Assembly (NCBI GenBank): GCA_965240325.2
Contig: OZ251235.1
Location: 1,054,001-1,118,000, forward strand
Reading direction: 5' to 3'
Source of the DNA: Rebecca billardiae RCC1528
Taxonomy: Eukaryota > Protista > Haptophyta
DNA length: 64,000 nucleotides
Under the pieces are notes generated by a model, which worked only from the letters and a program-made list of their open reading frames with translations, ran no database searches and was not told the origin of the DNA. This document shows, in pieces, positions 1,963 to 23,097 of the stretch. Position 1 is the stretch's first letter, and each line of letters opens with the position of its first letter. A program made the translations under genes and the position numbers.

Positions 1963-2958
1963 TCAGTGCTCCTTCAAGTGCCTCGAGCGCGGGTTCGGGC
2001 GTGCAGGCTCGGGCGTTGGCGCGTATTTATGCGCGCAGCACAGGCCGAGGCAGATCAGCACAGCTGTCAGCGAGGCCAGAAAGAGGTCCACGCAGATGGC
2101 CAGCGGCTCGGCGCGGTCAAGTATCCGCTCGAGCTCGGCGTGCGTGTGTCTACCCGGGTAGGGCACGCCGTCGACGCAGGCCGGCGCGTCCTCAGCGCTC
2201 AGGCCGAGGAAGGCGCACAGCGGGCCAAGCCCATCCGCCGGCCGATGCACGAGCAGCTGCGCACTGGGCACAGCTGTCTGCACGTGCTCCACCCAGCGCT
2301 CGTGGGCCGTTGCCAGGGCACCGAGCTCGGGCGGCGTCAACGCGGGCCCGCGCGGAGCGCCTAGCGTCGACCACATGAAGGGATCGAGCACGCGCCAGAG
2401 AAAGAAGAGCTCTCTGGCCAACTGCCACGGCCGTCGCTTCAGAACGGGCGCGATTCGCAGCGTCGTGGCCGTCACATCACGCGCCCACGACTCGGCTGAG
2501 TCGGGGATGGTAAGGATGACGCGGGCGTCAGGGTAGCGCCCCAGCGCGTCCTCGAGCATGAGAGACGCCGGGAGGCCGACCGTGGCGTTGAAGCCCGCGC
2601 CAGCCAGCGTGTCGAACAGGTGGGTGCGCGCATGCTCGCGCATGGTCGCGTTGTCCAGCTCCCTGGCGTGGGCGAGCGTGGACCAGCCGCGGATGTGGCC
2701 GCTCTCGAAGACATTGCGGAGCGTGTACGGCCGGAAGCCGAGCAGCACCAGCGCCTCCTCGAGCTCGCTCCCGAGCGCGTGCTCCAAGCCTGCGCCGATC
2801 ACGCGCAACGGCTGGATCGGCTCAGCCCGCGCAGACACTGGTGGGAAGGAGGCTCTCCACAGGAGGCCGAAGATGTCCGTCTCCGCGTGCAGTGCCGCTG
2901 TCGCGCTCGCCAGGCGCAGCACCCACAGCATCAGCGACGCCGTGCGTCGCGGGTGCAT
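1963..2958 (-). CDS. Sulfotransferase_4-family P-loop protein with signal peptide and C-terminal TM helix
   Basis: LRVIGAGL..G.SEL.EAL..LGF, YPDARVILT..DSAESW, H..WV...VPSAQLLV and GLGPLCAFLG fit the family. Hydrophobic N- and C-termini. ATG at 2958 is preferred over the upstream ORF-track start. Confidence 0.75.
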   Translation of the reverse strand: MHPRRTASLMLWVLRLASATAALHAETDIFGLLWRASFPPVSARAEPIQPLRVIGAGLEHALGSELEEALVLLGFRPYTLRNVFESGHIRGWSTLAHARELDNATMREHARTHLFDTLAGAGFNATVGLPASLMLEDALGRYPDARVILTIPDSAESWARDVTATTLRIAPVLKRRPWQLARELFFLWRVLDPFMWSTLGAPRGPALTPPELGALATAHERWVEHVQTAVPSAQLLVHRPADGLGPLCAFLGLSAEDAPACVDGVPYPGRHTHAELERILDRAEPLAICVDLFLASLTAVLICLGLCCAHKYAPTPEPARPNPRSRHLKEH

Positions 2959-3308
2959 CCTCGCGACGGTTGGAGCGCGGACGCGGCGCTTGGCCACGCG
3001 TGCGACTTCTCGCCCGCGCCAAAGCCGGCTTGCCGCTCGGGATGGCGCCTTGGCCGCTTGGCGCTTGCGAGCGGCTTTGAGCTTGCGCTTGGCGAGCGCC
3101 GGAACCGCGGAAGCTTTCGTCAGGTTTCTGACCAGCAACCTGGGTTCGTGCCACCGGTGTCCCGCTGCGCGCCGCCGGCACAAGCGCGAAAAGCATCCAG
3201 GGCGTCGGAGTGGCGTAGTCTGCGCGCTCGGTCGGCGGAGGCCGTGGGCCGGACCGCGGCGAGCGTGGGGCTTGGGGCGCGCGTTAGACACCCTCGTGCC
3301 CTCGCGGC

Positions 3309-4271
3309 ATGTTCAACCTTGTCCGCATGCACGACATCGTCAAGATTCAGCCGTCCGAGTTCAGCAAGGATGTGCATGACGCGATCGTCGAGGCGATCAA
3401 CTGCAAGTACACAAACAAGGTGGTGCTGGAGACCGGGCTGTGCATGCAGCTGTACGACGTGCTCAGCATCGGTGACGTGTACCTCTACCCGGGGAGCGCG
3501 GCCCGGCACGTCGAGGTCAGATTCCGCCTGCTCGTCTTCCGACCGTTTGTTGGCGAAGTGGTCCTTGGCACGGTGCTGGGCACGTCCAAGCAGGGAGTGA
3601 CGGTGTCGCTGGGCTTCTTCGAGGACGTGTTGATCCCGATCGAGCTGATGTGGCCCACCGTCGAGTGGGACGACGTGGAGAAGACGCTGTGCTGGAAGAA
3701 CGAGCTCGGCGACTTTTACATCGACACGGGCGAGCACGTTCGGTTCCGCGTTGCCGAGATCGTGTATAATGGCTCGACCACGTTCGCGGAGCGGCCGGGC
3801 AGCAGCGTGGCGAACTGCGGGGGCATGGGGGCGGGTGTGCTCGGCCCCGGGGTGCCGGGATGCTCGGGGGCGGCCTCGGCCGCGGGGGCTGGCAGCAGCG
3901 CGCTCGCGGGCGGCGCGGGCCAGGCGGGGTCTGCGGGCGCAGCACATGGCGCGCGCGGGGCGGCAGGCGCTGCGCCGTCTCAACAGCAGGCTGGCGCTTT
4001 CGGCTCGGCGGCAAAGGCAGCCGCGAGCTTGGCGGGTGGGCTCGTAGGCATGCCCGGCGGCGCGCCGCATGGCCTGGGTAGGCAGCAGCCCATGGGTGGC
4101 CCGAGGGCGGCGCCGTTCAGCGCGGCGGAAGCGGCGCCATACCGGCCGCCGATGGCGCTCAAGGGCGCGATGAACGAGGACGGGCTTGGGCTGTTGTCGT
4201 GGTGGCCGGGCGAGGACAGCAACAGCGACGGCGCCAACCCCGGTGAGGGCTTCGACGACGATGCGGCGTAA
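3309..4271 (+). CDS. POLR3H: RNA polymerase III subunit RPC8/RPC25 with a long Gly/Ala-rich insertion
   Basis: KYTNKVVLETGLC, FRLLVFRPFVGEV, SLGFFEDVLIP, and the C-terminal NEDGLGLLSWW signature of RPC25. Confidence 0.92.
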   Translation: MFNLVRMHDIVKIQPSEFSKDVHDAIVEAINCKYTNKVVLETGLCMQLYDVLSIGDVYLYPGSAARHVEVRFRLLVFRPFVGEVVLGTVLGTSKQGVTVSLGFFEDVLIPIELMWPTVEWDDVEKTLCWKNELGDFYIDTGEHVRFRVAEIVYNGSTTFAERPGSSVANCGGMGAGVLGPGVPGCSGAASAAGAGSSALAGGAGQAGSAGAAHGARGAAGAAPSQQQAGAFGSAAKAAASLAGGLVGMPGGAPHGLGRQQPMGGPRAAPFSAAEAAPYRPPMALKGAMNEDGLGLLSWWPGEDSNSDGANPGEGFDDDAA

Positions 4272-5258: not shown

Positions 5259-8200
5259 CTACTCGGCCGCGCGCTCGGCAGCCCCCGCCTCGCCCTTCTC
5301 GGCGAGCACGGCGCGGAGCTGCGCGCTGAGGCTGCCGAGCGTCGCGTTGGGCGAGGTGAACGCCGAGAGGGGCACACCCACGCTGAACTCCTTTTGGAAC
5401 GTCGAGCGCATCTGCACGACGTCGAGCGAGTCGAGGCCGAGCTCGGCGAGAGATGCGTGCGCGAGCGGCTCCCCTGGGATGAAGCGCTCGAAGAAGGCGG
5501 CGAGCTTCGCGCCGCTCGGCGAGGCGTCGGCGTCGGCGGGCGCGGCGGGCGGCACGGCGCGGGCGCGCGAGCCGCCCGCCGCCTCATCGGAGCTGCCCAC
5601 CTCCGAGCCGCCATCCGTGCCGTCGTCCGCGTCCGTCTCCGCGCCGTCGGCGTCGGCCGCATCCTCCGACTCCGACGCGCCGAGCAGCTGCGCGCGGCTG
5701 AGCGCGCTGAGCGCGGAGTGGCCGTCCCAGACAGAGCGCTTCCACGAGACGTCGGCGACTGCGTACTGCGGCCGAGGCAGCAGGCGCGCGAGCGCCGCGC
5801 CGCCCGGCGCGGGCGGCTCGGCCGCGCTGCCCAGCTGCGAGCGCACATCCTCCAGAATGTCGGACAGGGCGCGCAGCGCGAGCGCGGTCGGTAGCGGGGT
5901 CTCGCCGCCCGCGACGGCCATGTCGTGCGCCTTGGTGCCCGCCGCGGCCATGCCCACCTCCGCCCACGGGCCCCAGTTGACCGCAACCAGCGCGGGTGGG
6001 GCGGGGGATGAGCCCTCCTCCTCCTCCTCCTCCTCCTCCGCCTCCGCCTCCGCCTCCGCCTCCGCCTCCGCCGCGTCCGCCGCCTCGCGTGCCTCTCCGG
6101 CCGCGCACGGCAGCGCGGCCTCCGGCGCGTGGGCAAGACGCGCGGGCCACGTGGCGGCGTGGTCGAGCAGCGCGTTCGCGGCGCAGTAGTTGGCCTGGCC
6201 GCCAAAGCCGAGCAGAGAGGACGTGGAGCTGAAGACAAGCGCCCACTCCGTGCGCCACCGCCGCGCTCGGCACAGCTGCAGCAGCGGCAGCAGCGCAGCT
6301 TTCGGGCCGAGCGGCGTGTCGAAGGCGGCCTCGGAGCCCATCCGACTGATCGCGCCGTCGGCGAGCGCTCCGGCGAGGTGTAAGATGCCGTCCACTCTGC
6401 GCAGCGAGCGGAGCTGCGCGCACGCGAGCAGGCCCTGCACGCTACCCATGTCGGGCGCCACGAGCACGCGCGCGCCGAGCGGGTGCGCGCCGCCGCCCTC
6501 GAGCGGCCGGCGCGAGAGGACGAGCACGCGCCGCGGCGCCACGCCACACGTCTGGATGAGCCAGCGCACGACCTCGCGGCCGATGCCGCCCGTCCCGCCG
6601 GTGACGAGGTACGTGCCGCGCGCGGCGTCGATGAGCGATGGCGGCGCGAGCGTGCCGCGCCCAGCCGCGGGCGCGGGCGCGGGGCCTGGCGGGCTGCTGA
6701 GCGGCTGCGAGCGCAGCCGGAGCGCCGACGCGCGCAGCCGCCGGCCGGCCGCCACCTGCAGCACCGTGTCTGACTCGCGCTCGCACGCGCCGCCCAGCGC
6801 GACGCGCAGCGCGCGCAGCGCGGCGGGCGGCGCAGCACTGTCTGCGGGCGCGCCCAGCCACGACGGCGCGCCAGCCGTGCGGACCAGCACGCGCCGCAGA
6901 GAGAGGTCCGGGTACTCAAAGGGGAGCGCCTTGGACGCGCCGAGGGCCAGGGCGCCGTCGGCGCCCGCGGAGCCGATGAGCACGAGCCGGCCGGACGCGT
7001 CCGCGTCGATCAGCGCGCGCAGCGTGCGCATCAGCTGCCATGCCTGCGCGCGCTGCCACGCCAGCCAGCTCACGTCGCCCGGCGCGCCCGCGCTCGGCGG
7101 CGGCGGCGCGCGCCGCAGGAGCAGCTCGCCGCGCGTGCGCAGCGCGTCCAGCTGCGCGCTGCCGACGGGGCTGGGCTCGGCGGCGCCCGGCGCGACGGCG
7201 GCGCCCTCGGCCGCCGCCGAGAGACTGTGCTCAGCCTCGGCCGCGCCCACGACCACTGACAGACGCCAGGCCTGCGCGGCCGCCTCTTCAGTGGCGCCCG
7301 CGCCGTCGGCCGTCGGCTCCCAGCGCACGGCGAAGAGCGGGTTGGGCTCGGCGCGCGGCGGCGCGCCGCCTGCGCGCTGCGGCGGCGCGCCCGCGCCGTC
7401 CGCATGCGGACGCAGCGCGTCCGCGAGCGCGCGCGTCAGCGCGCCCGCCTCCGCCTCCATGAAGCCATGGCCGCCACCAAAGCAGAGGGTGCGCATGCGA
7501 GCGCCGCTCGGCTCATCGCACGCGCGCCGCCACGCGGGCGCGTCGGCCGGCGCGAAGGCCGCGTCGGCGACGCCGCACGCGACGACGAGCTCCACAGGCA
7601 ACGCCCACGCCGCGCCCGCGCCCGCCTCGCCGCCCGCCGCCGCGCCCGCGAGCGCGCGCCGCACGCGCGCCTCGTTCCGCGCATCAAACCCGAGGTCTGA
7701 TTCCAGCATCGGCTCAAAGTAGCTCGCCCACGCCTCCGACGCTCGGGCCTCGGGGGAGGCGAGCGAGTAGGTGGCGACGGCCTCGCGCACGTCGACGGGC
7801 GCGGGCAGCGCGTCCGCCGCGGGCTCGGCGGGCGGCGCGCGCCCGGCGAAGAGGCACAGCACCAGAGGCCCGGACTCGGGCAGCGGCGGCGGCGCGGCGC
7901 CGCCGTCGGCGACCGCCGCGCCGGCCGCGCCGGCCGCGCCGGCCGGTTCGCCCCGCTGCAGGAGCGAGCGCGCGAGCTGCCAGCAGATGAGCGCGCCCAT
8001 GCTGAGCCCGACGAGCGCGCACGGCAGCGGCGAGGCGCGCTGCAGAGCGCGCACCGCACCCGCCAGCCCCGCCAGCTCGGCCTCATCCGCGCCGCCGTCG
8101 TCGGCGAGCGGCGGCGCGTCCGCGCGCGCGCCGCGCGCTGGCAGCTCGAGCGCGATCACCTCGAGCCACGGGGGCGCGGCGGCGGCCCAGGGGGCGAAGG

Positions 8201-11200
8201 CGGCGGAGGAGCCGCCGGCGTACGGCGCGCAGTACGCGCGCGCGCGCGCGCGCCCCGCGCGCGCGCTCGGCGTGAGCCGGACGAGGCAGCTCGGCAGCTC
8301 GGCCGCGGCCGCGGCGGCGCGCCGCGCGCGCCGGCTCGCGCCGCGCGCGCGCGCGCGCGCGTCAGCCGAGCCGCGCGCGCGCGCGCGCGCGCCCGCCGGC
8401 TGGTGCTGCGTGGCGAGAGCGGACGGCGGGCGCTCGGAGCCGGCGACGTAGACCGACGCGCCCGCGTGCTTCCAGTGCGTCACGCGCTCGAACGCGTACG
8501 TCGGCAGCGGCACGCGCCGCGCGGGCGGCAGCGCCGCGTGCGCTCGCTGCACGTCCGAGTGGAGCGCGGACCAGCCGACCGGCACGCCGAGCGTCCAGAG
8601 CTGCGCGAGGAGCGCGGCGAAGACGGCGCCGTCCGTGTCCGCGGAGGCGGGGCGGCGGATGGACTGCTTGAGCGAGGGCGCGGGCAGCCCCTCCGTCGCG
8701 CAGCACTTGGCGATCAGCGTGCTCAGCGTCGAGCCGGGACCGACCTCAAGCACCAGCGAGGGCCGCCACGCCATCAGAGACTTGACGTTGTGCTCCCAGC
8801 GCACGGCCGAGCGCATGTGCCGCGCCCAGTACGAGCGGGGCTCGTCCTTCGCGCACGTGCTCTCGGCACCGCCGCCGCCGCCGCCGCCGCCCGCGGCAGA
8901 CGCCGGCGCCAGGTCCGCCTCGGTGAGCCAGCCGCCCGTGACGTTGGACACAAGCGGCACGCGCGGCGCGCGCGTCGGCAGCGTGGCAGCGGCGCCCTCC
9001 AGCGCATCGCAGGCGCGCGCCATCAGCCGCGAGTGGAAGGCGTGCGAGACGTGGAGCAGCGCGCAGCGCAGGCGCGCGGGCTCCGCCGCCGCCGACGCGC
9101 CGCCGCCGCCGCCGCCGCCGCTCGCGTCAGCATGCGTCGTCGGCGGCGTCGGCGTCGGCGGCGGCGGCGGAGCCGGCGCGCCCACCGGCTCCGCCGCCGC
9201 CGCGGCGCGCGCCGGCAGGGGCGCCGGATCGGCGGCGATGGGCAGTCCGGGCTCTGCGCTCGCGGGCGGCGAGGCGCAGGCGACCGAGCCGGCCTCGTCG
9301 CTGGAAGAGGAGGGGACGGAGGAGGTCTCGCGCGTCGACGTCGACGCGGCCCCCTCCGCCTCCCAGCGGCGGTCGGCGGCCCAAGTTGGAGGCGAAGGCG
9401 GCGTGCGGCGCGCGGCGGCCGACGCGGCCGCCGCGGCCGCCGCGGCCGGCTCGGCGGCGCGCGCGCGCAGCGGCCGGGGTGCGTCGGCGTCGTCGGAGGG
9501 CGCAGGCGAGGCGGCTGGCGAGGCGGACGTCCCGAGCGTCGAGCCCTCGAGTCCCTCGAGCACACCCTTCAGCCGCGTGAGCGCGCCGAGCGAGCCGGCC
9601 ACCACCGTGTGCCGCGGTGAGTTGAACGCCGCGACATCCAGCTCGGACTCGAGGCCGAGCGCTCGGAGTGTTGCCTCCATCCACGCGCCGTCGACGCCGG
9701 TGACAGAGAGCATGCCGCCCACGCCCGCCGGCATGTGCAGCTCGGTCGCCAGCGCGCGCGCCGCCACCAGCCGCAGCGCCTCGCTCAGCTCGAGCACGCC
9801 GGAGAGCGTGGCGGCGACATACTCGCCGATCGAGTGGCCGCCGAGCGCGGACGGGTGCACGCCGCACGCGAGTAGCGTCTTGGCCATGGCGTACTCGGTG
9901 ACGAAGAGCGCGGGCTGCGTGACGGTGGGCCTGGCGAACGCCGCGTCCAGCTCCGCCTGCGACACGCCGCGCGCGCCCTCGTGTGCCGCGTACATGTGCG
10001 CGCGCACGTCGAAGCCGAGCAGCGGGCGCAGTGCATCGGCGCACTCATCGACGGCCGCACGAAACGTGACCGAGGTTGAGTAGAGGCCTGCACCCATGTT
10101 GTGGTACTGCGAGCCCTGGCCGGGGAAGACAAAGACGACGGACTGCGACGAGGAGCGGTTCCCCAGCGGCGCGGTGCTCGGCGGCGCGGGCTGCGCCGGC
10201 GCGGGCAGCGGGCTCGCGCGGAGCACCTCAGCGCCCGCGCCTCCGCCAGACTCTGTGAGCGCGGCGCGCAGCGCGCGCGCCGCCTCGCGCCAGCTGCCGT
10301 CGGCGACGACGACGGCGAGGCGCTCGGCGTGGTGCGTGCGTCCCGTCTGCAGCGTGAACGCCGCGTCGGCGAGCAGCGCCGGCGGCAGCTCCGACCCGTC
10401 CGCCGTGTCCGCGCGCTCGGCGTCCGCCGCGTCCGCGAGCCGCGCGGCGTGCGCGCAGATCCGCGCCGCCGTCTGCCGCAGCGACCAACTCGTCTTGGCC
10501 GAGATCGGCAGGATGCTCGGGAGCTGCGGCGGCGGCGCGGCGGGCGGCGGCGCGGCGGTGCCTCCGCTCGTCGCCTCCGTCGGCGGGCCCTCCGCGCCGC
10601 CGCCCGCCGCGCCGGCCTGCGGCAGCTTCGAGCCGAGCGACGCCGCGCGCCCGCCCGCATACGGCGCGTGGCCGGAGACGGAAGACTGCCTGTCGTCGTC
10701 GGCGACCGTCGACCCTCCGACCGTCGAGCCGCCGGAGGACATCCAAGAGCCGTGCGCGACGGTGGGGCCGGCGGAGAGCGCGGCGGACGAGAAGGCCGCG
10801 GTCGAGCGCGTCTCCTCGCGCTCGAGCTCGTCCGCCGCGCTCGCCGCCGCGCTGCGCTCGCGGAAGGACGGGTGGCGGCGCACAGGCCAGCGCGACGGCG
10901 TGCGTGCCGAGCCGGCGCCAGGCGGCCGGCGGCGCGCGCTCAGCTCGAGGTCCGCGGCCGGGGCGGCGGCGTGCGTGGCGCGCTCGTCAGCCTCGGGCTC
11001 TTCCTCGCCCGCGGCCGGCGCGTTCGGGCTGGGCGCCTCCTCCAGCACCAGGTGGCAGTTCGTCCCGCCGATGCCGAACGACGAGACGCCCGCGCGGAGC
11101 ACGCCGCCCGCGGCCGCGGCGGCCGGGGCCCACGGCACCAACGCGTTCGCCACCCAGAATGGCGAGCGCTCGAGCTCGATGCGCGGGTTGAGCCGGCGGT

Positions 11201-14147
11201 AGTGCGCAGTGGGCACGAGCGCGCGGTGGCGCAGGCAGAGCAGCGTCTTGAGCAGCCCGGTGATCCCCGCCGCCGCGTTCGCGTGCCCGATGTTCCCCTT
11301 CACCGAGCCGATCGCGCAGAACCGGCCGTGCGCGTCCGCGGAGCCGCCATTCGCACTGAAGGCCTCGTTGAGTCCGCGCACTTCGATGGCGTCGCCGACG
11401 TGGGTGCCGGTGGCGTGGCACTCGACGTACGAGATGGCGGAGGCGGGGACGCGCGCCATCCGCTGCGCCGAGAGCACCGCGCGCCGCTGCGCCGCCGCGC
11501 TCGGCGCCGCGTACCCCGCCTTGCTCGCGCCGTCGTTGGTGACGCCCCAGCCCTTGAGAACGCCGATCACGTTGTCGCCGTCGGCGAGCGCGTCCGAAAG
11601 GCGTCGTAGGACGACGGCGCCCGCGCCGTCGCCGAAGAGGGTGCCGTCCGCGTCGGCGTCGAACGGGCGCACGTGCCCGTCCGACGAGGACACCAGCCCC
11701 TCCGCGAACGTGTACCCCATGTTCGGGAACGTGATCGAGCAGCCGCCGGCAAGCGCCATCGAGCACTGGCGCGTGACGAGTGCCTGCGCCGCCTGCGCGA
11801 CCGCGACGAGCGACGAGGAGCATGCCGAGGTCACGGTCATCGCCGGGCCGCCGAGGTTGAGCCCGTACGCGACGCGCGTGGAGATGTAGTCCTTCTCGTT
11901 GCCCACCTCGCCCAGGAAGATCGCCCCCGGGTCGAGCACGTCCTTGAGCGGCTGCGCGTCGAGGTGGTGCACCAGGTAGCCATCGATGCCGCACGAAGCG
12001 AACACGCCAACGTCGCGAGGCTCGCCGCCTAGCCGCGGCGGGTAGCCGGCGTCCTCGAGCGCGGCCCAGGCGACCTCCATGAAGACGCGGTGCTGCGGGT
12101 CCATCAGCGCGGCCTCGGCGCGGCCGATCCCCCAGAACCGCGCGTCGAACTTGTCCGCCTCCGGCAGCGCCTGCGCCGCCCGGACGAAGTTCGGATTGTC
12201 CAGCACCTCAGCCGGTACGCCTTTTGCGCGGAGCGTGTCGGCGTCGAGGCGCGTGAGGGTGTCCCCGCCGGCGGTGAGCACGCGCCAGAAGTCGTCGAGG
12301 TCCTCGCAGCCGGGGAGCCGCCCCGCCATCCCGATCACCGCGATGTCGCAGTCCAGGCCGAGGTGCCGCCCGTCCTCGGACGCGTCCGCCGCGCCGGCGC
12401 CGCCCTTGGCGCGCGCCGCGCCGCCCGCGCCGTCCGCGCCGCCGTCCGGCTCCGCGTGCAGGGCAGAGATGTGCTTGGCGAGCGAGGTGACGGTGGCGTG
12501 GGAGTAGAGGTCGAGCACCGAGAGCGCGAGGCCGAGCGTCTTGTTCAGCCGCGCCACGAGCTCCGCCGCCGAGAGCGAGTGCCCGCCCAGGTCGAAGAAG
12601 TTGTCGTCCGGGTCGACGTGGCTGAGCCCAAGCTGTTCCGCCCACGCGGCGCAGAGCAGTTCGCGCGTGCGCTGCACGGACGCCATCGGCGTGCCCGACG
12701 CGGCGCCGCTCGGCTCGAGGAGGGTCTCGCCGTACGCGTCCGCGCCGTCCTGCGCCGTCCCGCCCTCCGCGCCCGCCGTCGCCGAGTGCAGGTCCCCCTG
12801 GATCAGGTCGCCCTCCGTCGGCTCCGGCAGCGCGCGCCGGTCGAGCTTGCGTGACTCGGAGGCCATGCGGGGAAGTCCCTCCTCCATCACGACATAGTAG
12901 GTGGGTACGGCGTAGGAGGGGAGCGCGATCTTGAGCTGCGACTTGACGAAGAGGAGCAGCTCCGAGCGGCGCACCGGCAGCGACTCGTGCGGCTCGATGT
13001 ATGCGCACAGCGCCACCGGCACCGGCCGGCCGCCGTCCGCGTCCGCCCGGAGCACAGGCTTGACCACGCCCGCGCGCACGCCCTCGACCTGCGCGAGCGC
13101 GGCCTCCACCATCGGGAGGCCGACCTTGAAGCCGCGGATCTTGATCGTGGAGCCCGTGCGCCCGTGCACGATGAGCTGGCACGACGAGTCGCCCGGCACG
13201 CCGCGCGACACCGCCACGCCGAGGTCGCCGGTCCGGTAGATCCGCCCCTGCCACGATGGCTGCCCGCCCGCGAACGGCGACGGCACGAACGCTTCGGCTG
13301 TCTTGGCCGCGTCGCCGAGATACCCCGGGATGGCGAGGCCGTTGGACTGCACGCAGACCTCGCCGAGCTCGCCGAGCTTGGCCGGCTCGAGCGAGCCGAT
13401 GCGCAGCACGCGCACCGTCACGCCGACGCACGGCACGCCCGCCGGCAGCGCGGACGACGCGTCGAGCCACTTGGAGATGTCCGAGGCAGACGCGGCGACG
13501 CCCGCCGCTGAGAGGACTGAGGACGTGGAACCGGACGTGGGCACGCGCGCGCCGAGCGCGGTGGCGGCGGGCGGCGGGGCGGCGGCGCCGGGCGGCGGCG
13601 GCGCGAGCGCGGACGCCGGCGCCGACTGCGCGCCCGCCGCGCCGCCCGCCGCCGCCGCCGCCGCCGCGCCGCTCGGCACCGCCGCCGCGGCCGTCGCGGC
13701 CGCGCCCGCCCACCCCGGCCCGTCAACGTGCATGCAGATGTCTCCCGCTTCCCACGTCGAGTACGAGTTGACGAGCGCGGCGGTTGGGAGGAGCTGGCGG
13801 AAGCGGCGCGCGGTCGCGCGCGCGCACATCTCGCCGCACGCGTACCACAGCCGCAGCCCCGAGTCCGCCAGCGCGGAGAACGCGCCGGGCGCCGCCTCGA
13901 GAAGCGTGTGCAGCAGCGACGGCGTCGTAAGGATCCGAGTCGCGCGCTGGTCATGCAGGAAGGCCAGAAGCTTCGACGGCTCGAGCAGCACGTCGTCGGG
14001 GACGCACACGGTGGTGTGCCCCGCGAGCGGCGCGCGCAGGCCCTCCCACACGAACATCACCTGGCACGCCTCGCGCTCGACGAAGCCGTACTCGTCAAAG
14101 TCGGCCGGCGCGTCCGAACCGCCGCCGCCGCCAAAGCCGCCGCCAAA

Positions 14148-14197
<50 letters not shown>

Positions 14198-16151
14198 TGC
14201 CGCCGCCAGGGCTGTAGGGAACGTACGCGTAGCGCGCCTCGATGCCGAGCTTGAGCGCCTGGTGCGGGCACATGATCCCCTTGGGCGTGCCCGTCGAGCC
14301 CGACGTCATCGTCACGATGATCGTCTGCTCGTCGGACATGTGAGACCACTCAGCGGGCGGCGGCGCCCACGCTTCCACCTCCGCCTCGGCTGCGAGCGTG
14401 CGCCGCCAGCCGTCGCGGAGCTCGCACACGCGCGTGCCCGGCGGCACGATCGAGTGGGGCAGGCGCGAGGCGTACGCGGCGCAGGTGAGCACGAGCGGCG
14501 GCTGCACGTCGCGCAGCATCTGCGCGATCGTCTGCACCGACCAGTTCGCGCCGAGCGGGAACAGCCCGCAGCCGACCCGCAGCGCACCCAGCTGCACGCT
14601 TACGTAGTCGCAGTCGTGCGGCAGCAGGACTGAGACGATCTGTCCGGGCTTGATGGCGTAGCGCTCGGAGGCCATGGCGGTGGCGAGCAGCTCGGCGTCG
14701 GCGCGCAGCTGCGCGAACGTGCGCTGCACGCTCGCGTCGATGCACGCCAGCCGGCGCGGCACCCGCGCCGCCGCCTTCTCGAACTGCTGCCAGATCGAGT
14801 GAGGCCAGACTGTCACGGCACCGCCGTCGAGAACCGCGTCCGGCAGCGCGGCGCGCGCGCTGCGGAGGTGGCGCACGATGGCGTCGAGGACGGCGGGGCG
14901 GGTGGCCTCGGCGTGGAGGTAGAAGTGGCCCCCGGCGAAGAGGAGCGGCGGCTCGGACGCCGCCGCGTCACCGTCGGCGGCCGCGCTTCCGGTGCCAGCG
15001 GCCGCCGCGGCCGCCGCGGCCGCCGCGGCCGCGGGCAAGGCCGCGCCACCGGTGGCGGCTGCGGCGAGAGGCGGCAGGGCGCGCGTGCCAAACGCGAGCC
15101 ACGCACGCATCGCCTCGGCGGGCACGGTGGGGTCGTCCGCGCCGCCGAGCGGCACCACCGGCACGGGCAGCGCCGAGTGCCGCCCGCCCTCCGACCCCCA
15201 CGTCTCGTGCGCGCGCAGGTCGGTGCGCAGGGACGGCAGGATGGCCGCCAGCAGCTCTGGGTCGACTAGCACGTCGTCGGGCATGTAGTCCCAGCGGCGG
15301 ACGGCGTCGAGGAACTGCGCGTCGGGCAGCTCGTGGATCCACTCCGACGGCGGCACACGCTCGTCCGGCGGCGCGTGCGCCGACGCGAGCACGAGCAGCG
15401 GCAGGCGCAGCGCGCGCGCCTCGAGCTCGCGCGCCACCTCATACGCGACCAACGCGCCAAGCGAGTGGCCGAAGAAGGCGAAGTTGCGCAGCGTGTGCGG
15501 GCGGAGCGCGTCGACGATCGCGACGGCGAGCTCGCGCACGCTCCCCAGCGCGGGCTCGCTCAGCCGGCTGCCCCGTCCTGGCGGGTTGATCGCCCACAGC
15601 TCGATGTCTGCGCGAGCGCGGGCGGCCGAGACGGCGGCGCGCGGGAGTGGGCGGCGCGCGCGCGCGCGCAGCGCGAAAAGGGGGCGTGAGCGAGGCGCGA
15701 CGGCGGCGAGGCGCGCGCGAAAGGCTCGCGAGCCAGCTGCGCGGGCTGCTCCACGCGGGACGCACGCCCGCGCCGGGATGCTCGATGCCCGCGGCACGGG
15801 TGTGAGGTGCACGCGCGCGCGGGCGCCCCCGGGGACCCCCCTGCTCGGCCGAGCAGCGCGCTGGGGAAGAGCGTGCTCGCGTACGCCTGGGCTGAGCGCA
15901 GCCACTGGGTGGCGCCCGTGCGACTGGCCCCAGCTCGCCGCGCGCCCCCTCCCCTCTTGACGGCATGCGGGCCGGCTCGCGCGCCGCCTGCCCCGACGCT
16001 GAGTGCCGCGCGACGCACCGTCTGGCAGCAGGTCAGCCCAGCCCGCGTACGACGAGGCGCTTCCACCGGCGTGCGGGAAGCAGAAGAGGGCCACGCGTGC
16101 GTCGTCGCGAGGCTTCAGGCACACCAGCCACCCGCCACCGGAAGACGCCAT
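5259..16151 (-). CDS. BurA-like hybrid NRPS/PKS, TE-A-PCP-KS-AT-TE-KR-ACP; exons 16151-16019 and 15607-5259
   Basis: TE1: FPHAGGSA, GHSLG (~15456-15470), GGHFY. A: TSGSTGTPKG (~14290), REACQVMFVWE, YRTGDLG, KIRGFKV. PCP: FFDLGGHSL (~12580). KS: DIAVIGMAGR, TSACSSS, ECHATGT, KGNIGH. AT: FPGQGSQ, GHSIG, HAFHS (malonyl type). TE2: PYAGGSS, VGLSMG (~8000), GGHGF. KR: TGGTGGIG, YCAAN. ACP: LGLDSL (~5430). A stop-free 411-nt GT-AG intron (15608-16018) explains the Arg-rich stretch in the 3727-aa ORF. Confidence 0.93.
14118..14207 (-). repeat. (GGC)n poly-Gly coding trinucleotide tract inside the A domain
   Basis: In-frame run of ccg/gcc triplets between the A3 and A4 motifs. Confidence 0.9.
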
Positions 16152-16871
16152 CCCGAGGCGCGTCGTGCCGCCAGCGTGGCGCGGCGGTGGTGGTATCAGC
16201 AGGGTATGCCGGTGCCGATGCGAGCTCTGGACTCTGTCGCCGATCGAGACCGCAGTGCTCACCAGCGTCCGCTTCGCGCGCCCGCGAAGGCGTCCGCCTG
16301 CGTCTGTGCATCTTGTGCCACTGATGGGAGGAATCTCACAACAACACCTTGGACCACGAGTCGTAAGAGCTATGTGGTCGCCAACCGCTATGGTATTCAT
16401 TAGGCTCGCAATTATGCACGGGCACCCTCTGATTGGCCACATCGTGACATCGGTTCGCTGAAAGATATGAGCAACTCGCGCGGATTCTCTTGCCGGCGAT
16501 AGTGAACCGATGCATCATTCGGAGCTCAAATGAAGAATTGACTCAGTTGAGTACTACACGCGAGTCATTTCAGACCGATATGTGCCCGCCTACCCAATAG
16601 TCATCTTGCCACGAGGCCTCTCAATTGCGAACCCATCTCTCTGCCCGGTCGCCTGTGCACGTAGCTATTCTTTTCCACCCAAGTTACCCATGTGGTATGT
16701 CACAATACAGACGATGACGTCATCATGCCGAAGAAAAGCATTTTCCCTTTTTTGACGGCCGCCGCCAGCCCGCCACCATTTTCCGTGCGCATCTCGGTCG
16801 CGAAATCCACCTGCCGCGCGCGCCGAACCTCCGCGTCTCGACGTTCGGGCGGCGGGCGCGCGGTCCCAACC

Positions 16872-18198
16872 ATGGTAGCGCCAGCGATCGAGCTGGCCAC
16901 GGACGCGACCGCGCTCTACGGCGATCCGTCGCCTGCACCCGTGCGTGGCCGGCAGAACCTCCCCTCCGGCGACTCGCCCCTGCTGCCCGAGACGATCGGC
17001 AGGCCGCAGAGCTGCGCTTTCCCGCTCGCCGTCACCGCGCCCCAGGGCGGGAGTGTGGCCGAGCCGGAGGCATACGCTGAGCCCGTGCGCCGGCTGCTCG
17101 ACGAGGAGGGCGCTCTCGAGCGCCACGGCGCCGTCCTCCTCCGGGGCCTGCCCGTCTCCACGCCCGAGGACTTTGGCCGCTTCTGCGCCGCGCTTGGCTG
17201 GAAGCGCAACCAGCTCGGCGGCGGCGGCACGGCGCGCACCATCCTGGGCAACAACGTGCGCACGGCGTCGGATGAGCCGCCCGAGCACACCATCGAGCCT
17301 CACCTGGACATGGCGCACAACGCGGCGTTCCCGCATCGTATCGCCTTCTTCATGCAGCACGGCCCGCCGCCCGGTGTAGGCGGCGAGACTGTGCTGACAG
17401 ACATGCGTGCCGTAACTGCGGACATGAAGGTGCGCGTGGGCACGCGCGCCCGCCGGCTGCCGCGGCGTCCGCCCCGCGCCGCACGCGGCGCCCACGCCCC
17501 CGCGACACGCCGCGCCGCTGCTTGCACGCGCCCGCGCGCAGGCCGCTGGCCTGGACGCCGAGTTCGAGCGACGCGGCGGCGTGCTATACACGAAGAAGCT
17601 CTGGTCGGCCGCCCGGGTCGAGCACTCGTTCACGTGGCAGCGCCGCTTCTTCTCGGAGGCGCGCGAGGGCGTGGAGGAGCAGCTGCGCCAGCTGCACAGA
17701 ACCGAGTGGGAGTGGACGTGCGCGCACGCTTCGTCGCGCGGCTGCGTTCCGAGCGCGCGCGCGCCCGCCCGCCCGCCCGCCCGCCCGCACCACCCGCCTC
17801 AGCCGCCCGTTGCCAACCCCCGCGTCCGCCTCCGTGCCCGGCGCAGCGACGACGAGACCCTCGTCACGCGCAACTGGCTCCCCGCAGTTGCCGAGCACCC
17901 GGGCACGCGCGAGGCCCTGTGGTTCAACGGCATCCACACCAACCACCGCGACTACTTCGACCTCGCGCCGCACATCGACACGACAGACGGCAGCCCGTTC
18001 GACTCGTCGTATGGCGACGGCACGCCGATCGACGACGAGACGCTCGCCCGCATCCGCGCGTCCATCTGGCGCAACTCGGTCGCGGTCGCGCTGCGCTCGG
18101 GCGACGTGGTGATCGTAGACAACATGCTCGCTGCGCACGGGCGCATGGGCTGGACGCCCGGGGCGCCGCGCAAGATGCTGCTCACCCACTTCGAGTGA
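16872..18198 (+). CDS. TauD/TfdA (SyrP/CAS-like) Fe(II)/2-oxoglutarate dioxygenase; exons 16872-17429, 17542-17717, 17847-18198
   Basis: HGAVLLRGL, iron motif IEPHLDMAH (HxD), GGETVLTD, EALWFNGIH, YGDGTPIDD, GDVVIVDNMLAAHGR (distal His). GT-AG introns at 17430-17541 and 17718-17846 restore a single frame. Confidence 0.9.
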
Positions 18199-18241
18199 GC
18201 GGAGCCCTGCGCCCTCGCGCAGGCAGGCACTAGCAGTGTAC

Positions 18242-18325
18242 TTTTGTGGCGGTGTCTTTGTGCAGTGTTGGATGGCGTTAATCACGCCTTAACCAAGTGT
18301 GCACGTTAAATCATAGTAAACTGTA
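18242..18325. mobile_element. 84-bp dispersed element end (Tc1/mariner-like ...ACTG|TA); exact reverse complement of 51711-51794
   Basis: Direct comparison of the two copies. Partial related copies at ~48066-48105 and ~57633-57667. Confidence 0.65.
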
Positions 18326-18622
18326 GGTGTAGGCAGTGGGGCAGCAGCTGACTTCACTCACTAGACTTCGTCAACGCCAGTCGATCGGACTGCTCCGATG
18401 TCAACACGTGGCCCGGCCCGGAGCATGGCCGCTCAGCAGTGCGGCGGCGCCGGGAGCGCGGGCGACGCCACTATATCAGCGACAGCATGCTGATGCACTC
18501 ATGCAGTCCCGGGCCGTTGGCCCGGACTTGATCACACCATCATCAGTCACTGGCAGAGCTGCTCGCCAATCAGTTTTGCGGCCACTTACTCTGAGCCTCT
18601 CGACAGCTGAGATCGTCAATGG

Positions 18623-19759
18623 TCACAGCGCCGGTGCCGGCCGGGCTCCACGGCGAGGCAGATGAGACGGCGCGCTGGGCGCGGCGCGCGCGCTCGGCTG
18701 GGCAGCCGCGCTCCCCTGCTCCGCCTCCTCGCGCGACAACCTCAGCGCCAGCTCGACCATCGCCTCCTCCTCGAGCGCCTGCTGCCGCGCCGCCTCCTCC
18801 CGGCGCGAGGCCTCGAGCGCGGCAGCCAGGGCCGCGGCCTCCTCCTCCTCGGACGCGTCGGCGTGGGCGAAGGAGCGCGGGCGCGCGGTGCTGCGCTGCA
18901 CCTCGGCCTGCCGCCGAGAGGCCTCCATTGCCGCGCGGAGCTCCTCGTCCTCGCCTGCGCCGAGGTCCGCTGCGGCCCCGCGCGCCCTGAAGGCGGCGGG
19001 GCCGCCGGCTCCGCCGCTCAAGCCGCCACCCGCGCCGCCCGCGCTGCCGGCCGCCAGCCTGGAGAGGCGCAGCGCCTCCTCGAGGTCGGCGTCCTCGCGC
19101 GCAGACAGCTCCAGCTCGTAGTCGTCGTCGTATGTGCCGAGCCGACGCCCCTGCCCCCGTCCGAACGCCTCCCCCCATCCCGCGGCCTCGCCAGCCGCTG
19201 CCGTGCCGCCCTGCCCTCGCCGGTATGTTGTCGTCTGCGTGCGACCGTCGGGGCCGGTGCGAGTGATGGTGACGGTGGCGCCGCCCATCGAGCCGAGCGC
19301 GGCGGCCTCGTCGAAGAGGGAGCGCCCGGACATCGCGCGCTCGAAGAACGAGCCGCCGCCTCCGCCCAGCGAGGCGGAGCGCGCAAACGAATCGGCGCCA
19401 CCGAAAAAGGCCCGAAAGATCGCATCCGCATCCCCCATGCTGAATGGGCGGAAGCCCGCGGCCGGGTCGAGGCCGGGGCCTCCCCACGGGCCATCCGCCG
19501 CGCCGGGCCCGTAGCTCGCGCCGCCGAACGGCGCGCTGGCGGGCTCGCTCCCCCCGAGGTCGTACTCGCGCCGCTTGTCCGCGTCAGACAGCGTGGCGAA
19601 CGCCACCGAGATCTCCTTGAACTTCTCCTCGGCGGCGTCGCGGTTCTCCGGGTTCTTGTCCGGGTGCCAGCGGAGGGCGAGCTTGCGGTACGCCTTCTTG
19701 ATCTCGTCCTCTGTCGCGTCCCGCTCGACGCCGAGCACGGCGTAGTAGTCTTTGGCCAT
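18623..19759 (-). CDS. DnaJ/Hsp40 (J domain + G/F-rich region) with four ubiquitin-interacting motifs
   Basis: DYYAVLGV...LRWHPDKN. UIMs: [57 protein letters not shown]. Confidence 0.9.
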
Positions 19760-19893
19760 CGGCACCACGCGGCGGACGGGCGTGAGGTACCGCCCGCGGT
19801 TCTACTTTGATGGCGCCCGACGTCTCGAAACTCGCTCCCCGTTTGCCAGGGCGACAGGACCCGGTTCGAAGCCGGACTCACGTGGCTCGCACG

Positions 19894-22800
19894 ATGCCGC
19901 TTCGGCAGCCTCCCGCCACCCGCGACGACGGTGCGGGCGAGGAGGCCGCCGCGGCGCAAGGCGCCGCGGGCGACGGCGTCGTCAAGCGGCCGAAGAAGTT
20001 CCGCAAGAAGACGCCCGCCGCCGACGGTGCGCGCGCCGCGGGCGGCGGCGCGAGCCTTCTCAGCTTTGGCGGCGAGGAGGAGGGTGACGACGGTGACGAT
20101 GGCGCCGGCGTGCTCGCGCGGCCCAAGCCTCGCGCGCGAGCACCCGGCGGGCTGCCGTCCGCCGAAGCGCACGGCCGGCAGCGCAAACATCGGCCCGGGC
20201 TGGTCGTGCCCATGCCGCCCGCGCCGCCCGCAGTCGTCGACACGCAGCGCGCACAGCCAGGCGAGTACACGGTCGAGCGGCTGGCGGAGCTCCGGCGCAA
20301 CGCGCTGCCGCCTCCGTCGGAGCAGCGCGCGGCCGAGCCGCGCGACGGCGAGGAGACCGATGCGCTCCCCGCCGATCCCGCGCCGGGCGTGCCCGCCGCG
20401 CCGTCCGCCATCCCGTCCGCCGACGCGGTGCGAGACGCGCGGATGGCGCGCGAGGCGGCGCGGCTGGCCGAAGCACACGGCAGCGACGGCGACGGCGACG
20501 AGGACGCGGGCAGCGGTGCGCGCGCGTTCATCCCGGTCGGTGCGCGCGGGGGCGTGGGCGGGCCGGCGGAGGACGACGAGGACGACGACGACGCCGGCTT
20601 TGGCGGGCTCGAGCGCGCGCCGCGGGCTGGCATCGGCGGCGGCGGAGGCGCGACAGCTCAGCCGAGCGCGCGGGGCGGCCCTGCTCGGCCGGGCGCCAAG
20701 CGCGGCACGCGCTTGACCGCATACGACGGGAGCGACGACGAGGGGAAGGACGACACGGCCGCCGCCGCCGCCGCCGCGCAGGCGCGCGCGCGCGCACAGC
20801 GCGCGGCAAACGGCGGTGGTCGCGCGGCCGGCGGACCGGACGGGGAGCCTGCTGGGCTGCCGACACTGCCGCCACCGCCGCTCGCAGCCGCCGACGCCAT
20901 CGGCAGGCTTGAGGCGGTGGTCGAGCGCGAGCGCGCGACGCTCGGCCGCGCGGAGGAGGCCCTTGACCGCCTCGAGGCCGACGCGCGCGCCGCCGCGGAC
21001 GCCCACGCCGCCCAGGTTACTCAGTCCGGACAGGCGGCGCGCTGCTACGAGTACTTACAATTACTCACGTCCTATGTGGAGGACTTGGTGGCGATGCTCG
21101 GGGCGAAGCGCGGCGCGATCGAGGCGGCGGCCGCCGAGGTGGATCGCGTGCGCGAGGCGCGGGCGCGCGCGCGCCGACGCCGCGAGCGCGCCGACGCCGA
21201 TGACGACGACGCGCGCGCCGCGCGGCTGCTGCGCGGCCTGTGGCCGGAGGCTCCGCCCGCGGCGGTGCGAGCGGCGGGCGCGGCGGCGGGCGGCGCGGCG
21301 GACGCGGCGGAGGAGGAGGTGGACGAGTTTGGGCGCTCGCGCGCGCTCGCTGAGCGCACGAGCGTCGCCCGCGAGCGCCGCCGCGCCCTGCGCGAGGCGG
21401 CAGAGGCGAGGCGGCGCAAGCGCCGCCTCGCGGCCGCAGCCGCCGCGCGCGCACCAGGCGGCGCTCGCGCGCGCGGCGTGTCGCCTGATGGCGCCGCCGC
21501 CGAGGATGGCGGCGCCCAAGCCCTTGGGCTGGCGATGGGCGAGGGCTGGTCCTCCGACGAGGCGGAGGAGGAGGCCGCCGAGCACGGCGGCGCGCGCGAG
21601 AACGGCGCGCCGCACGCCCACGCCGACGACGCCGCCGCCGCCGACGACGCCGAGGCGGAGGCGGAGGCGGAGGCGGAGGCAGTCGCTCTCGCAGCGCTGC
21701 GCGCCGTTCTCGACGACGACGTCGACGACGACTTCGCCGAGCCTCGGCGCGTGCTCGGCACGCTGCGTGGGTTCGAGCGCGCGTACCCGCAGCACTACGC
21801 CGACGCGTACGTCGGGGCGTGCCTGCCGAGGCTGCTCGCCCCTCTGCTGCGCGCGCGCGTCGCCGCCTGGGCGCCGGAGCGCGACGGAGGCGGCGGCCAT
21901 GCTGGCAGCGGCGGCCGCGGCGCGCAGGCGTGGCATGCGCCGCTTGTGGCGGGCGAGGCGGGCCTGCCCGACGTGCTCGGCGAGCACACGCCGCCGGCGC
22001 GCTCGCCCGCCGGCGCGGACGCCGAGGCCGAGGCCGAGCTCAAGCTCATCGCCGCCCTCAGCGCGCAGCTGGCCGCACCCAGGCTTACCCACTCGCTCTA
22101 TTTCAGCTGGGATCCGTATTCGGCGCGGCAGACGGCGCGGCTGGTGCGCGCGGCGGCGGAGGTGGCCGAGGCGCTGCAGTTCGTGTGCGAGGAGGGCGCG
22201 GCGGGCTCGGGCTCGCGCGGGCCGCGCGACGCCGCCGCGCGGCAGGGGGCGTGCGCGCTCGCCGGCGCGATGAGCGCGGCAGCCTCGGCCGGGAGCGCGG
22301 GCGAGGGCGGCGGCGCGGAGGAGGCGGCGCGCGCGCTCGAGCGTCTCCGGGCGGCGGTGCGCACGCGGCTGGCGGATGCGGTGGGCGAGTGCCGCGTGCC
22401 GCCGTGCCCGCCGCACGCGGCGGAGGGGATGGATCCGCGCGAGCACGCCGCCGTCTGGGCGATCGCCGAGCGTCGGTACCACCGGTCCCTCAAGCTGCTC
22501 CACTGCGCGTGCCTGTGGCAGCGCGCGCCGGGCGCGCTCCGGCGCGCTGAGCTGCAGCAGCTGGTGGCGCCGCTGGTGGGCGGCGCGCTGCTGCCCGCGC
22601 TGCGCGCCGTGTCGCGCGCGCAGCCGGTGCGCTGGGCGCTCGTCGCGCGGCTCGGCACCGCGCTCGTCGACGTGCTGCCGAGCGCGTGGCTCGAGCGCTC
22701 GGCCGGAGCGCCGGACGGCGCGCTCGGCGCCCTGGCGATCGTCGGGCCTGCGCATGCGCTGCTGCTGCAGCTGAGCGGCGCGCACGCCGCCGCCGCACGC

Positions 22801-22917: not shown

Positions 22918-23097
22918 GCGCAGCTTCGGCAGCTTGGCGAGGCCGCGCTGTGGCCCCATGCAGATGCTCGGGCGGCCGGATCTGATGATGATGATTGATG
23001 GTGATGATGATCTACGACGCGTATATATATTCGATGTAACGTAGTACTGCTGCTGATTCATCAATAGTATATGATGAGAGATACTATGGACGATCGA

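What the first reader, a model, noticed from the sequence alone, without database searches (positions are those of the whole stretch)
5259..18198. Two-gene mini-cluster: BurA-like synthase head-to-head with an Fe/2OG dioxygenase (BurC analogue?)
Seen: the start codons are ~720 bp apart (16151 and 16872) on opposite strands, and the dioxygenase has an intact HxD...H triad. Known (from memory): in the bur pathway a 2OG dioxygenase, BurC, hydroxylates gonyol to gonydiol, and BurG then converts that to the cyclopropanol. Biosynthetic clustering is uncommon in microalgae. Inference: the alga may make a hydroxylated or otherwise oxidised gonyol. No KARI-like BurG or DMSP-synthesis gene is in this window, so the end product may be a new sulfonium metabolite. 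Caveat: divergent pairs are common throughout this window.
Basis: partly seen in the sequence, partly recalled or inferred. Interest (0 to 1): 0.82.

Follow-up and report, generated by a model that had tools for sequence, protein, structure and literature searches.

The report
Algal burA–burC-like head-to-head gene pair
A haptophyte-type alga carries, back to back, homologues of the two bacterial enzymes that build the sulfur osmolyte gonyol and then hydroxylate it, which gives testable gene candidates for an unstudied branch of marine sulfur metabolism.

Summary
A BurA-type megasynthase (5259-16151, minus strand) and a three-exon Fe/2OG dioxygenase (16872-18198, plus strand) diverge from a 720-bp spacer. 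The His-x-Asp...His triad is intact.

The synthase has BurA's unusual domain order (TE-A-T-KS-AT-TE-KR-ACP). It also has BurA-type adenylation signatures, and its KS falls inside the BurA clade.

The dioxygenase is a BurC homologue, not merely an analogue:
- It is the best match to BurC in this genome, and BurC-like genes are its best matches in the bacteria sampled.
- In trees, its algal family is sister to bacterial BurC (support 97/96).
- It keeps all 16 residues shared only by the two clades.
- In bacteria, BurC-clade genes lie next to a BurA-type gene in 9 of 9 testable loci.

The pairing is not conserved elsewhere. Orthologues in five other algal loci lie next to no PKS, and four other eukaryotic BurA-like loci hold no dioxygenase. 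No other bur genes are in the window.

Most likely the pair makes gonyol and a hydroxylated gonyol such as gonydiol.

The scan had already flagged the synthase separately (s1-363194).

The parts
5259..16151 (-). BurA-type hybrid NRPS-PKS gene with domain order TE-A, A, T, KS, AT, TE-B, KR, ACP. The stop codon is at 5259-5261.
   Evidence: Pfam domains. Collinear with eukaryotic and bacterial BurA-type proteins. KS lies in the BurA clade.
15168..16151 (-). N-terminal type II-like thioesterase (TE-A). It is interrupted by an in-frame intron at 15608-16018 (GTGCGT...CAG).
   Evidence: PF00975. Comparison with P0024 and P0046 shows a 137-codon insert. Splice signals were read.
12723..14783 (-). 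Adenylation domain with BurA-family signatures. The A4 motif reads QVMFVWE, with no Asp235. The A5 motif reads NSYSTWEAGD, with an acidic residue.
   Evidence: Alignment with BurA of B. contaminans, Noviherbaspirillum and algal homologues, against canonical NRPS A domains. BurA-A features are from PMC7496086.
12468..12659 (-). Carrier (T/PCP) domain of module 1.
   Evidence: PF00550.
11199..12347 (-). Ketosynthase domain.
   Evidence: PF00109 and PF02801. It is 57-62% identical to bacterial BurA KS, against 43-50% to the nearest other KS, and sits in the BurA clade at 99/92.
8400..10136 (-). Acyltransferase domain, with low-complexity inserts.
   Evidence: PF00698, two stretches. Collinear BLAST.
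7404..8291 (-). Intramodular thioesterase (TE-B) between AT and KR. GLSMG carries the catalytic Ser and GGH the catalytic His.
   Evidence: Alignments A1 and A2. In the exhaustive profile search the top hits are BurA-architecture proteins.
6138..6617 (-). Ketoreductase domain.
   Evidence: PF08659.
5304..5453 (-). C-terminal ACP.
   Evidence: Second PF00550 stretch. 44-52% identical to the C-termini of P0046 and P0024.
16152..16871 (.). Shared divergent spacer and probable bidirectional promoter. It holds a TGACGTCA palindrome at 16715-16722 and an alternative in-frame ATG at 16725.
   Evidence: Sequence read. No expression data could be obtained.
16872..17429 (+). Dioxygenase exon 1. It carries the N-terminal VRGR motif and the HxD of the facial triad (His 17301-17303, Asp 17307-17309).
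   Evidence: PF02668 at 1.5e-13. 33% identity over 165 aa to BurC-like. Alignment A3.
17542..17717 (+). Dioxygenase exon 2.
   Evidence: Tiles onto the full-length orthologues between exons 1 and 3.
17847..18198 (+). Dioxygenase exon 3. It carries the distal His (18136-18138), the HGR and PRK arginines, and the stop.
   Evidence: PF02668 at 2.2e-15. 39-41% identity to BurC. It is the best match to BurC in this genome.

Best explanation
The two genes are the algal counterparts of bacterial burA and burC, transcribed divergently from one short spacer.

Inferred mechanism:
1. The megasynthase loads a zwitterionic sulfonium acid, most likely DMSP, on its unusual adenylation domain.
2. It extends the acid once with malonyl-CoA, reduces the beta-keto group, and releases gonyol through its intramodular thioesterase, as BurA does.
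3. The neighbouring Fe(II)/2-oxoglutarate dioxygenase then hydroxylates gonyol, probably at C2, to gonydiol or a close variant, as BurC does.

This is a two-enzyme sulfonium-osmolyte branch, not a malleicyprol cluster. The genes that make the cyclopropanol and the polyketide toxin are absent.

Shown here: the homology, the domain and motif content, the intact active sites and the adjacency. Inferred: the substrates, the products and co-regulation.
For: Synthase:
- Domain order is TE-A-T-KS-AT-TE-KR-ACP. This is the published BurA order, with an N-terminal TE-A and an intramodular TE-B that releases gonyol (PMC9428774).
- The TE-B catalytic Ser and His are conserved.
- A TE-B profile search of 1.84 billion proteins puts BurA-architecture proteins on top. 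They come from Burkholderia, Noviherbaspirillum, pelagophytes, Prymnesium and MMETSP.
- The adenylation domain lacks Asp235 and has the YSTWExxD motif shared with BurA (features from PMC7496086).
- The KS lies within the BurA clade.

Dioxygenase:
- BurC of B. contaminans finds this gene as its best match in the genome.
- Exon 3 finds only the BurC-like gene in Noviherbaspirillum.
- Among 401 Pseudomonadota genomes, the two best matches to the closest full-length algal orthologue are BurC-like genes beside BurA-like genes.
- Trees place the algal clade as sister to BurC at 97/91 and 97/96.
- The window protein keeps all 16 residues conserved in both clades and rare elsewhere.

Coupling and context:
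- BurC-clade genes sit within 10 kb of a BurA-type gene in 9 of 9 testable bacterial loci across three orders and phyla.
- BurC converts S-gonyol to gonydiol in vitro (PMC9359912).
- Haptophytes hold 23-61 mM gonyol (PMC8269262).
Against: - Orthologues of the dioxygenase in Aureococcus, Chrysochromulina tobinii and three unnamed eukaryotic contigs have no PKS within the flanks held, up to 10 kb each side.
- Four other eukaryotic BurA-like loci have no TauD gene within the flanks held. One of them has only 664 bp upstream.
- Identity to BurC is only 31-41%.
- The metal ligand is Asp where BurC has Glu.
- The algal clade is sister to, not inside, the bacterial BurC clade, so substrate or regiochemistry may differ.
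- The plant CAS-like At3g21360 family was not in the trees. BurC scores 102 bits against it, which is not far below its score against the algal gene.
- Orthologues, and possibly this gene if it starts at 16725, carry hydrophobic N-termini that the synthase lacks. The two proteins may therefore sit in different compartments.
- No RNA run was listed, so splicing and co-expression in this organism are untested.
- 'Gonydiol' turned up in only one identifiable paper of the library, the bacterial BurG study.
Confidence: 0.5

Rival explanations
1. The homologies are real but the two enzymes are functionally independent. The dioxygenase belongs to a widespread algal family that acts on some other small zwitterion or amino-acid-like substrate. 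Its place beside the synthase in this genome would be an accident of rearrangement, or a decaying remnant of an ancestral cluster.
For: - The dioxygenase family is conserved at 45-65% identity in many marine eukaryotes.
- It is unlinked to any PKS in 5 of 5 other loci.
- Orientation differs from the bacterial layouts. The pair is head-to-head here, but co-directional with genes in between in bacteria.
- This genome has about 18 TauD-family loci.
- Divergent gene pairs are the rule in this window.
Against: - Adjacency of two single-copy genes whose bacterial homologues are always neighbours has a chance expectation near 1e-4.
- Sixteen clade-specific residues are shared with BurC.
- No bacterial protein outside bur-like clusters scored higher against the algal family in the genomes sampled.
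Confidence: 0.3
2. The pair works as a two-step pathway, but on a different starter. The adenylation domain would load another cationic acid, for example a trimethylammonio acid such as beta-alanine betaine or TMAB, or dimethylsulfonioacetate. The dioxygenase would then hydroxylate the resulting 3-hydroxy acid, giving a nitrogen or shorter-chain analogue of gonydiol.
For: - The A4 motif differs from bacterial BurA (QVM.. against NVF..) and carries algal-specific inserts.
- BurA-A shares pocket features with a glycine-betaine-activating domain (PMC7496086).
- Haptophytes contain several such zwitterions (PMC3721227).
Against: - The acidic residue and the YSTWE motif are conserved with the DMSP-loading BurA.
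- Gonyol is an abundant haptophyte metabolite with no known synthase.
- Earlier unchecked notes of this scan place DMSP-synthesis methyltransferase genes in the same genome.
Confidence: 0.15

Closest known systems
BurA (MalA) of Burkholderia thailandensis and the B. pseudomallei group: the gonyol-forming NRPS-PKS
   Same: - Identical eight-domain order, including the N-terminal TE-A and the intramodular TE-B.
- The TE-B catalytic Ser and His are present.
- The adenylation domain has no Asp235 and carries the YSTWExxD motif.
- The KS is 57-62% identical and in the same clade.
   Different: - It is eukaryotic and has at least one spliceosomal intron.
- It has long Gly/Ala-rich low-complexity inserts, giving 3630 residues (ATG to stop, in-frame intron included) against about 2620.
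- The A4 motif reads QVMFVWE rather than NVFLAWE.
- It is not followed by burB-burF genes.
BurC: the Fe(II)/2-oxoglutarate gonyol hydroxylase that forms gonydiol
   Same: - TauD/TfdA fold.
- A shared N-terminal V-x-V-R-G-R motif.
- 16 of 16 clade-specific residues.
- Reciprocal best hits and a sister-clade placement.
- It lies next to a BurA-type gene.
   Different: - Only 31-41% identity.
- HxD instead of HxE.
- Three exons.
- Divergent rather than co-directional with the synthase.
- Its orthologues in other algae are unlinked to the synthase.
bur/mal malleicyprol gene cluster of Burkholderia
   Same: It contains homologues of two consecutive early steps, burA and burC.
   Different: - There is no SET-domain methyltransferase, aminotransferase, aldehyde dehydrogenase or decarboxylase.
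- There is no KARI-like BurG and no second PKS, BurF.
- The neighbours are housekeeping genes (Rpc25, GCFC-like).
- No cyclopropanol or toxin is therefore predicted.
Clavaminate-synthase-like protein At3g21360 (PDB 1y0z) and SyrP-like TauD proteins of NRPS clusters
   Same: Same fold and the same triad-plus-Arg layout. At3g21360 is the nearest solved structure for both BurC and the algal enzyme.
   Different: - The score is much lower: 49.5 + 19.8 bits, against 64.5 + 53.5 bits to BurC.
- SyrP-like and tier-2 bacterial proteins fall outside the algal + BurC clade.

Membership tests
BurA-type gonyol synthase | Domain order TE-A, A, T, KS, AT, TE-B, KR, ACP, with no C-terminal thioesterase | tested here: met
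   Pfam scan. TE-B lies between AT and KR. The order matches PMC9428774.
BurA-type gonyol synthase | TE-B belongs to the BurA TE-B-like group and keeps the catalytic Ser (GxSxG) and His | tested here: met
   GLSMG and GGH are invariant. The exhaustive profile search ranks BurA-architecture proteins first.
BurA-type gonyol synthase | Adenylation domain without Asp235 and with an acidic pocket residue (D606 of BurA-A) | tested here: met
   Alignment. The equivalence with D606 is inferred: the Asp is residue 586 in the B. contaminans homologue.
BurA-type gonyol synthase | KS groups with BurA KS domains | tested here: met
   The clade has 99/92 support and lies apart from the 11 nearest other hybrid KS domains.
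BurA-type gonyol synthase | Converts DMSP plus malonyl-CoA to gonyol | not testable with these tools
   This needs an adenylation assay and heterologous expression.
BurC gonyol hydroxylase | TauD/TfdA-family Fe(II)/2OG fold with an intact 2-His-1-carboxylate triad and a 2OG-binding Arg | tested here: met
   PF02668 on exons 1 and 3. H144, D146, the distal His and Arg are conserved. The carboxylate is Asp here and Glu in BurC.
BurC gonyol hydroxylase | Falls inside the clade of BurC proteins (orthology) | tested here: inconclusive
   Reciprocal best hits hold. The algal clade is sister to the bacterial BurC clade, not nested in it (97/96). Plant CAS-like proteins were not sampled.
BurC gonyol hydroxylase | Encoded beside a BurA-type synthase | tested here: met
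   The spacer here is 720 bp. The feature holds in 9 of 9 testable bacterial loci. It does not hold in 5 other algal loci.
BurC gonyol hydroxylase | Hydroxylates S-gonyol to anti-gonydiol | not testable with these tools
   This needs an in vitro assay as in PMC9359912.
bur/mal malleicyprol cluster | Presence of burB, burD, burE and burI (the DMSP route), burG (KARI-like cyclopropanol synthase) and burF (second PKS) | tested here: not met
   None is in the window. A BurG-like protein query and PF07991 found nothing in the genome. That is a weak test, because the housekeeping KARI was not seen either.

The most novel reading that the evidence does not exclude
Marine algae have a dedicated two-enzyme sulfonium pathway: a gonyol synthase plus a gonyol hydroxylase. 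It would produce gonydiol or a related dihydroxy-sulfonium acid as a so far unnoticed ocean metabolite. The first steps of the Burkholderia malleicyprol warhead pathway would share a direct common origin with it, by gene transfer between algae and bacteria. This head-to-head pair would be the only known eukaryotic locus that still keeps the two genes together.
Probability: 0.35. Interest if true: 0.85.

Novelty: new variant of a known kind. Interest (0 to 1): 0.68.

Why it matters
Gonyol reaches tens to hundreds of millimolar in haptophytes and dinoflagellates, and nanomolar levels in ocean particles. None of the 36 papers in the searched library that mention it names an algal gene for making or modifying it.

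This locus offers two concrete candidates at once. It also gives a specific chemical prediction, a +16 Da gonyol derivative, that metabolomics can check.

It links an algal osmolyte route to the early steps of a bacterial virulence-factor pathway. That makes the evolutionary origin of the pathway testable.

The algal BurC-like family occurs in haptophytes and pelagophytes. Its product, if it exists, may therefore be widespread in the marine sulfur cycle.

Tried and rejected
- Expression: the look-up of sequencing runs listed no RNA run for 15000-19000. Read laying could therefore not be used, and splicing and co-expression stay untested in this organism.
- Whole-length word search with the megasynthase: swamped by multi-module PKSs. 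Only P0024 and P0046 were useful.
- Word search on the A+T region: timed out.
- Word search on the first half of the A domain: returned only multi-A NRPSs and no BurA.
- Algal-only motif scan of 185,579 species genomes: found no bacterial relative.
- Metagenome scan: added only transcripts and further Chrysochromulina-like contigs, so no new gene contexts.
- BurG-like KARI: not found in the genome by a protein query or by PF07991. The housekeeping enzyme was not seen either, so this shows little.
- NCBIfam: gave only weak sub-threshold matches (GntD, clavaminate synthase) for exon 3.
- Full malleicyprol cluster: considered and rejected, because no other bur genes are present.
- DMSOP-forming S-oxygenase role for the dioxygenase: considered, but no evidence bears on it.
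- Co-occurrence of the two families across algal genomes: could not be tested, because the genome collections hold only bacteria and archaea.
- The exons were searched, aligned and placed in trees as separate rows. Full-length natural orthologues, chiefly P0122 at 64-68% identity, served as proxies.
Full report
**Observation**

The minus strand carries a stop-free frame from 5259 to 16442. The first ATG that starts a recognisable protein, MASSGGGWLV...FCFPHAGG, is at 16151.

On the plus strand a TauD-family gene starts at 16872 and ends at 18198. I read three exons: 16872-17429, 17542-17717 and 17847-18198. Both introns read GTGCGC...CAG.

Pfam TauD matches exon 1 (1.5e-13) and exon 3 (2.2e-15). 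In an alignment with sixteen full-length, intronless algal orthologues the three exons tile end to end, so homology validates the model.

The triad is His144 and Asp146 in EPHLDMAH, plus the distal His in AAHGR. Conserved arginines follow. The spacer is 720 bp.

Two corrections apply. The synthase has an in-frame intron at 15608-16018 inside its first thioesterase. An upstream in-frame ATG at 16725 could extend the dioxygenase by 49 residues.

**The synthase**

Pfam gives the order thioesterase, AMP-binding, carrier, KS, AT, a second thioesterase, KR, carrier. This is the order published for BurA. In BurA the intramodular TE-B releases gonyol and the N-terminal TE-A proofreads (PMC9428774).

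- TE-B keeps GLSMG and GGH.
- A TE-B profile searched against 1.84 billion proteins put 2.5-3.0-kaa proteins with the same layout on top.
- The named ones are from Burkholderia contaminans and B. ubonensis, Noviherbaspirillum, Pelagophyceae sp. CCMP2097, a Prymnesium MAG, MMETSP and EukProt.
- BurA's adenylation domain is said to lack Asp235 and to carry an acidic pocket residue (PMC7496086).
- In my alignment the window protein shares the family motifs xVxFxWE and N-x-Y-S-T-W-E-x-x-D with BurA homologues, where ordinary NRPS domains read F-D-x-S and N-x-Y-G-P-T-E.
- The KS is 57-62% identical to bacterial BurA KS and sits in a BurA clade (99/92), apart from the nearest other hybrid KS domains.
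- The gene is single-copy in the 72-Mb genome.

**The dioxygenase**

A word search with exon 1 found 34 relatives at 45-65% identity. All came from eukaryotic plankton sources, among them Aureococcus and Chrysochromulina tobinii.

I reached bacterial BurC through the gene contexts of BurA homologues. In B. contaminans the order is burA, SET-domain gene, TauD gene (341 aa), aminotransferase, aldehyde dehydrogenase, second PKS. In Noviherbaspirillum it is BurA-like, decarboxylase, KARI, TauD gene.

- Exon 1 matches these BurC proteins at 32-33% over about 165 residues, and exon 3 at 39-41% over about 97. Full-length algal orthologues match over about 330 residues at E 1e-31 to 1e-51.
- This is well above the best solved structure, At3g21360, at 49.5 and 19.8 bits.
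- BurC's best match in this genome is this gene, at 64.5 + 53.5 bits. The next locus scores 47.5 bits.
- Exon 3 finds only the BurC-like gene in Noviherbaspirillum.
- Among 401 Pseudomonadota genomes, the two best matches to the closest full-length orthologue (P0122) are BurC-like genes. I confirmed that the second of them lies beside a 2592-residue BurA-like frame.
- A motif scan of 185,579 species genomes found ten BurC-clade loci, in Burkholderiales, Hyphomicrobiaceae and Actinomycetota. A BurA-type gene lies within 10 kb upstream in all nine that have enough flank.
- Two maximum-likelihood trees place the algal clade, including both window exons, as sister to the BurC clade. Support is 97/91 and 97/96. 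SyrP-like and cyanobacterial or acidobacterial relatives fall outside.
- Sixteen alignment positions are conserved in both clades and rare in the others. The window protein has all sixteen.

**Is it a cluster?**

In this genome the adjacency is unlikely to be chance. Each gene is effectively single-copy, and the pair was defined in advance by the bacterial clusters.

It is not conserved in the other eukaryotes I could reach:
- Dioxygenase orthologues lie among unrelated genes in Aureococcus, in Chrysochromulina tobinii and on three unnamed contigs.
- Four other eukaryotic BurA-like loci show no TauD gene in the flanks held.
- All of these relatives are distant. No close relative of this genome was available.

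The window's other genes are a sulfotransferase, Rpc25, a GCFC-like protein, DUF5690, an EsV-1-7 repeat protein and a helicase. No other bur homologue is present.

**Mechanism**

The best-supported reading has three steps:
1. DMSP is loaded and extended to gonyol by the synthase.
2. Gonyol is released by TE-B.
3. Gonyol is hydroxylated by the dioxygenase, by analogy with BurC, which converts S-gonyol to gonydiol in vitro (PMC9359912).

Haptophytes hold 23-61 mM gonyol (PMC8269262). Earlier, unchecked notes of this scan describe the genome as a haptophyte's and place DSYB- and DSYE-type DMSP genes elsewhere in it.

The substrates and products remain inference. Several points leave room for a different substrate or for functional independence: the Asp-for-Glu ligand change, the low identity, the sister rather than nested placement, the possible presequence, and the lack of linkage elsewhere.

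**Limits**

- No RNA run was listed.
- Plant CAS-like proteins were not in the trees.
- Co-occurrence across algal genomes could not be measured.
- Exons were handled separately.

**Verdict**

This is a real, intact, head-to-head pair of burA and burC homologues in an alga. It is a eukaryotic two-gene variant of the early bur pathway and a good candidate for gonyol synthesis and hydroxylation. It is not a conserved cluster, and it is untested biochemically.

Noticed in passing
window 1963-3291 (-): A Sulfotransfer_4 (PF17784) gene lies two genes downstream of the synthase, separated from it by the housekeeping Rpc25 gene (3309-4271, +). A sulfotransferase near a hydroxy-acid pathway could be a tailoring enzyme, or it could be a coincidence.
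   Followed up: no
window 15608-16018 (-): An in-frame 411-nt intron (GTGCGT...CAG) sits inside the N-terminal thioesterase of the synthase, so the long ORF reads through it. Other Gly/Ala-rich inserts may also be introns or real low-complexity loops. One example is the Gly run between adenylation motifs A3 and A4.
   Followed up: partly
window 16715-16727: A perfect TGACGTCA palindrome sits in the shared spacer. It is immediately followed by an in-frame ATG (16725) that would add an Arg/Ser-rich 49-residue N-terminus to the dioxygenase. Many orthologues have hydrophobic N-terminal extensions.
   Followed up: partly
L018 (Noviherbaspirillum sp. ST9) 10001-24873; L052, L053, L055 (Micromonospora, Saccharothrix): bur-like sub-clusters with BurA-like and BurC-like genes occur well outside Burkholderia, including in Actinomycetota and Hyphomicrobiaceae. 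In Noviherbaspirillum the cluster also holds a KARI (BurG-like), a decarboxylase and an aminotransferase.
   Followed up: partly
L010 10001-11748 (Aureococcus anophagefferens, P0127): The Aureococcus orthologue of the dioxygenase is named 'platelet-activating factor acetyltransferase' in its source record. That does not fit its TauD domain.
   Followed up: no
G000:C32:267311-268210 and G000:C12:1979499-1980131: These are two distant paralogues of the dioxygenase. The C32 copy groups with the algal clade on a very long branch. The genome holds about 18 TauD-family loci in all.
   Followed up: partly
whole genome G000: Neither a BurG-like KARI query nor Pfam KARI_N found any match, although a photosynthetic alga should have a housekeeping ketol-acid reductoisomerase. 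The gene is probably split by introns or lies beyond this search's sensitivity.
   Followed up: no
window 23098-24864 (-), 28526-29530 (-), 30785-38260 (+): These positions hold a DUF5690 gene, a five-repeat EsV-1-7 cysteine-rich protein, and a 2491-residue frame joining an AAA_11/AAA_12 helicase to a classic AAA ATPase.
   Followed up: no
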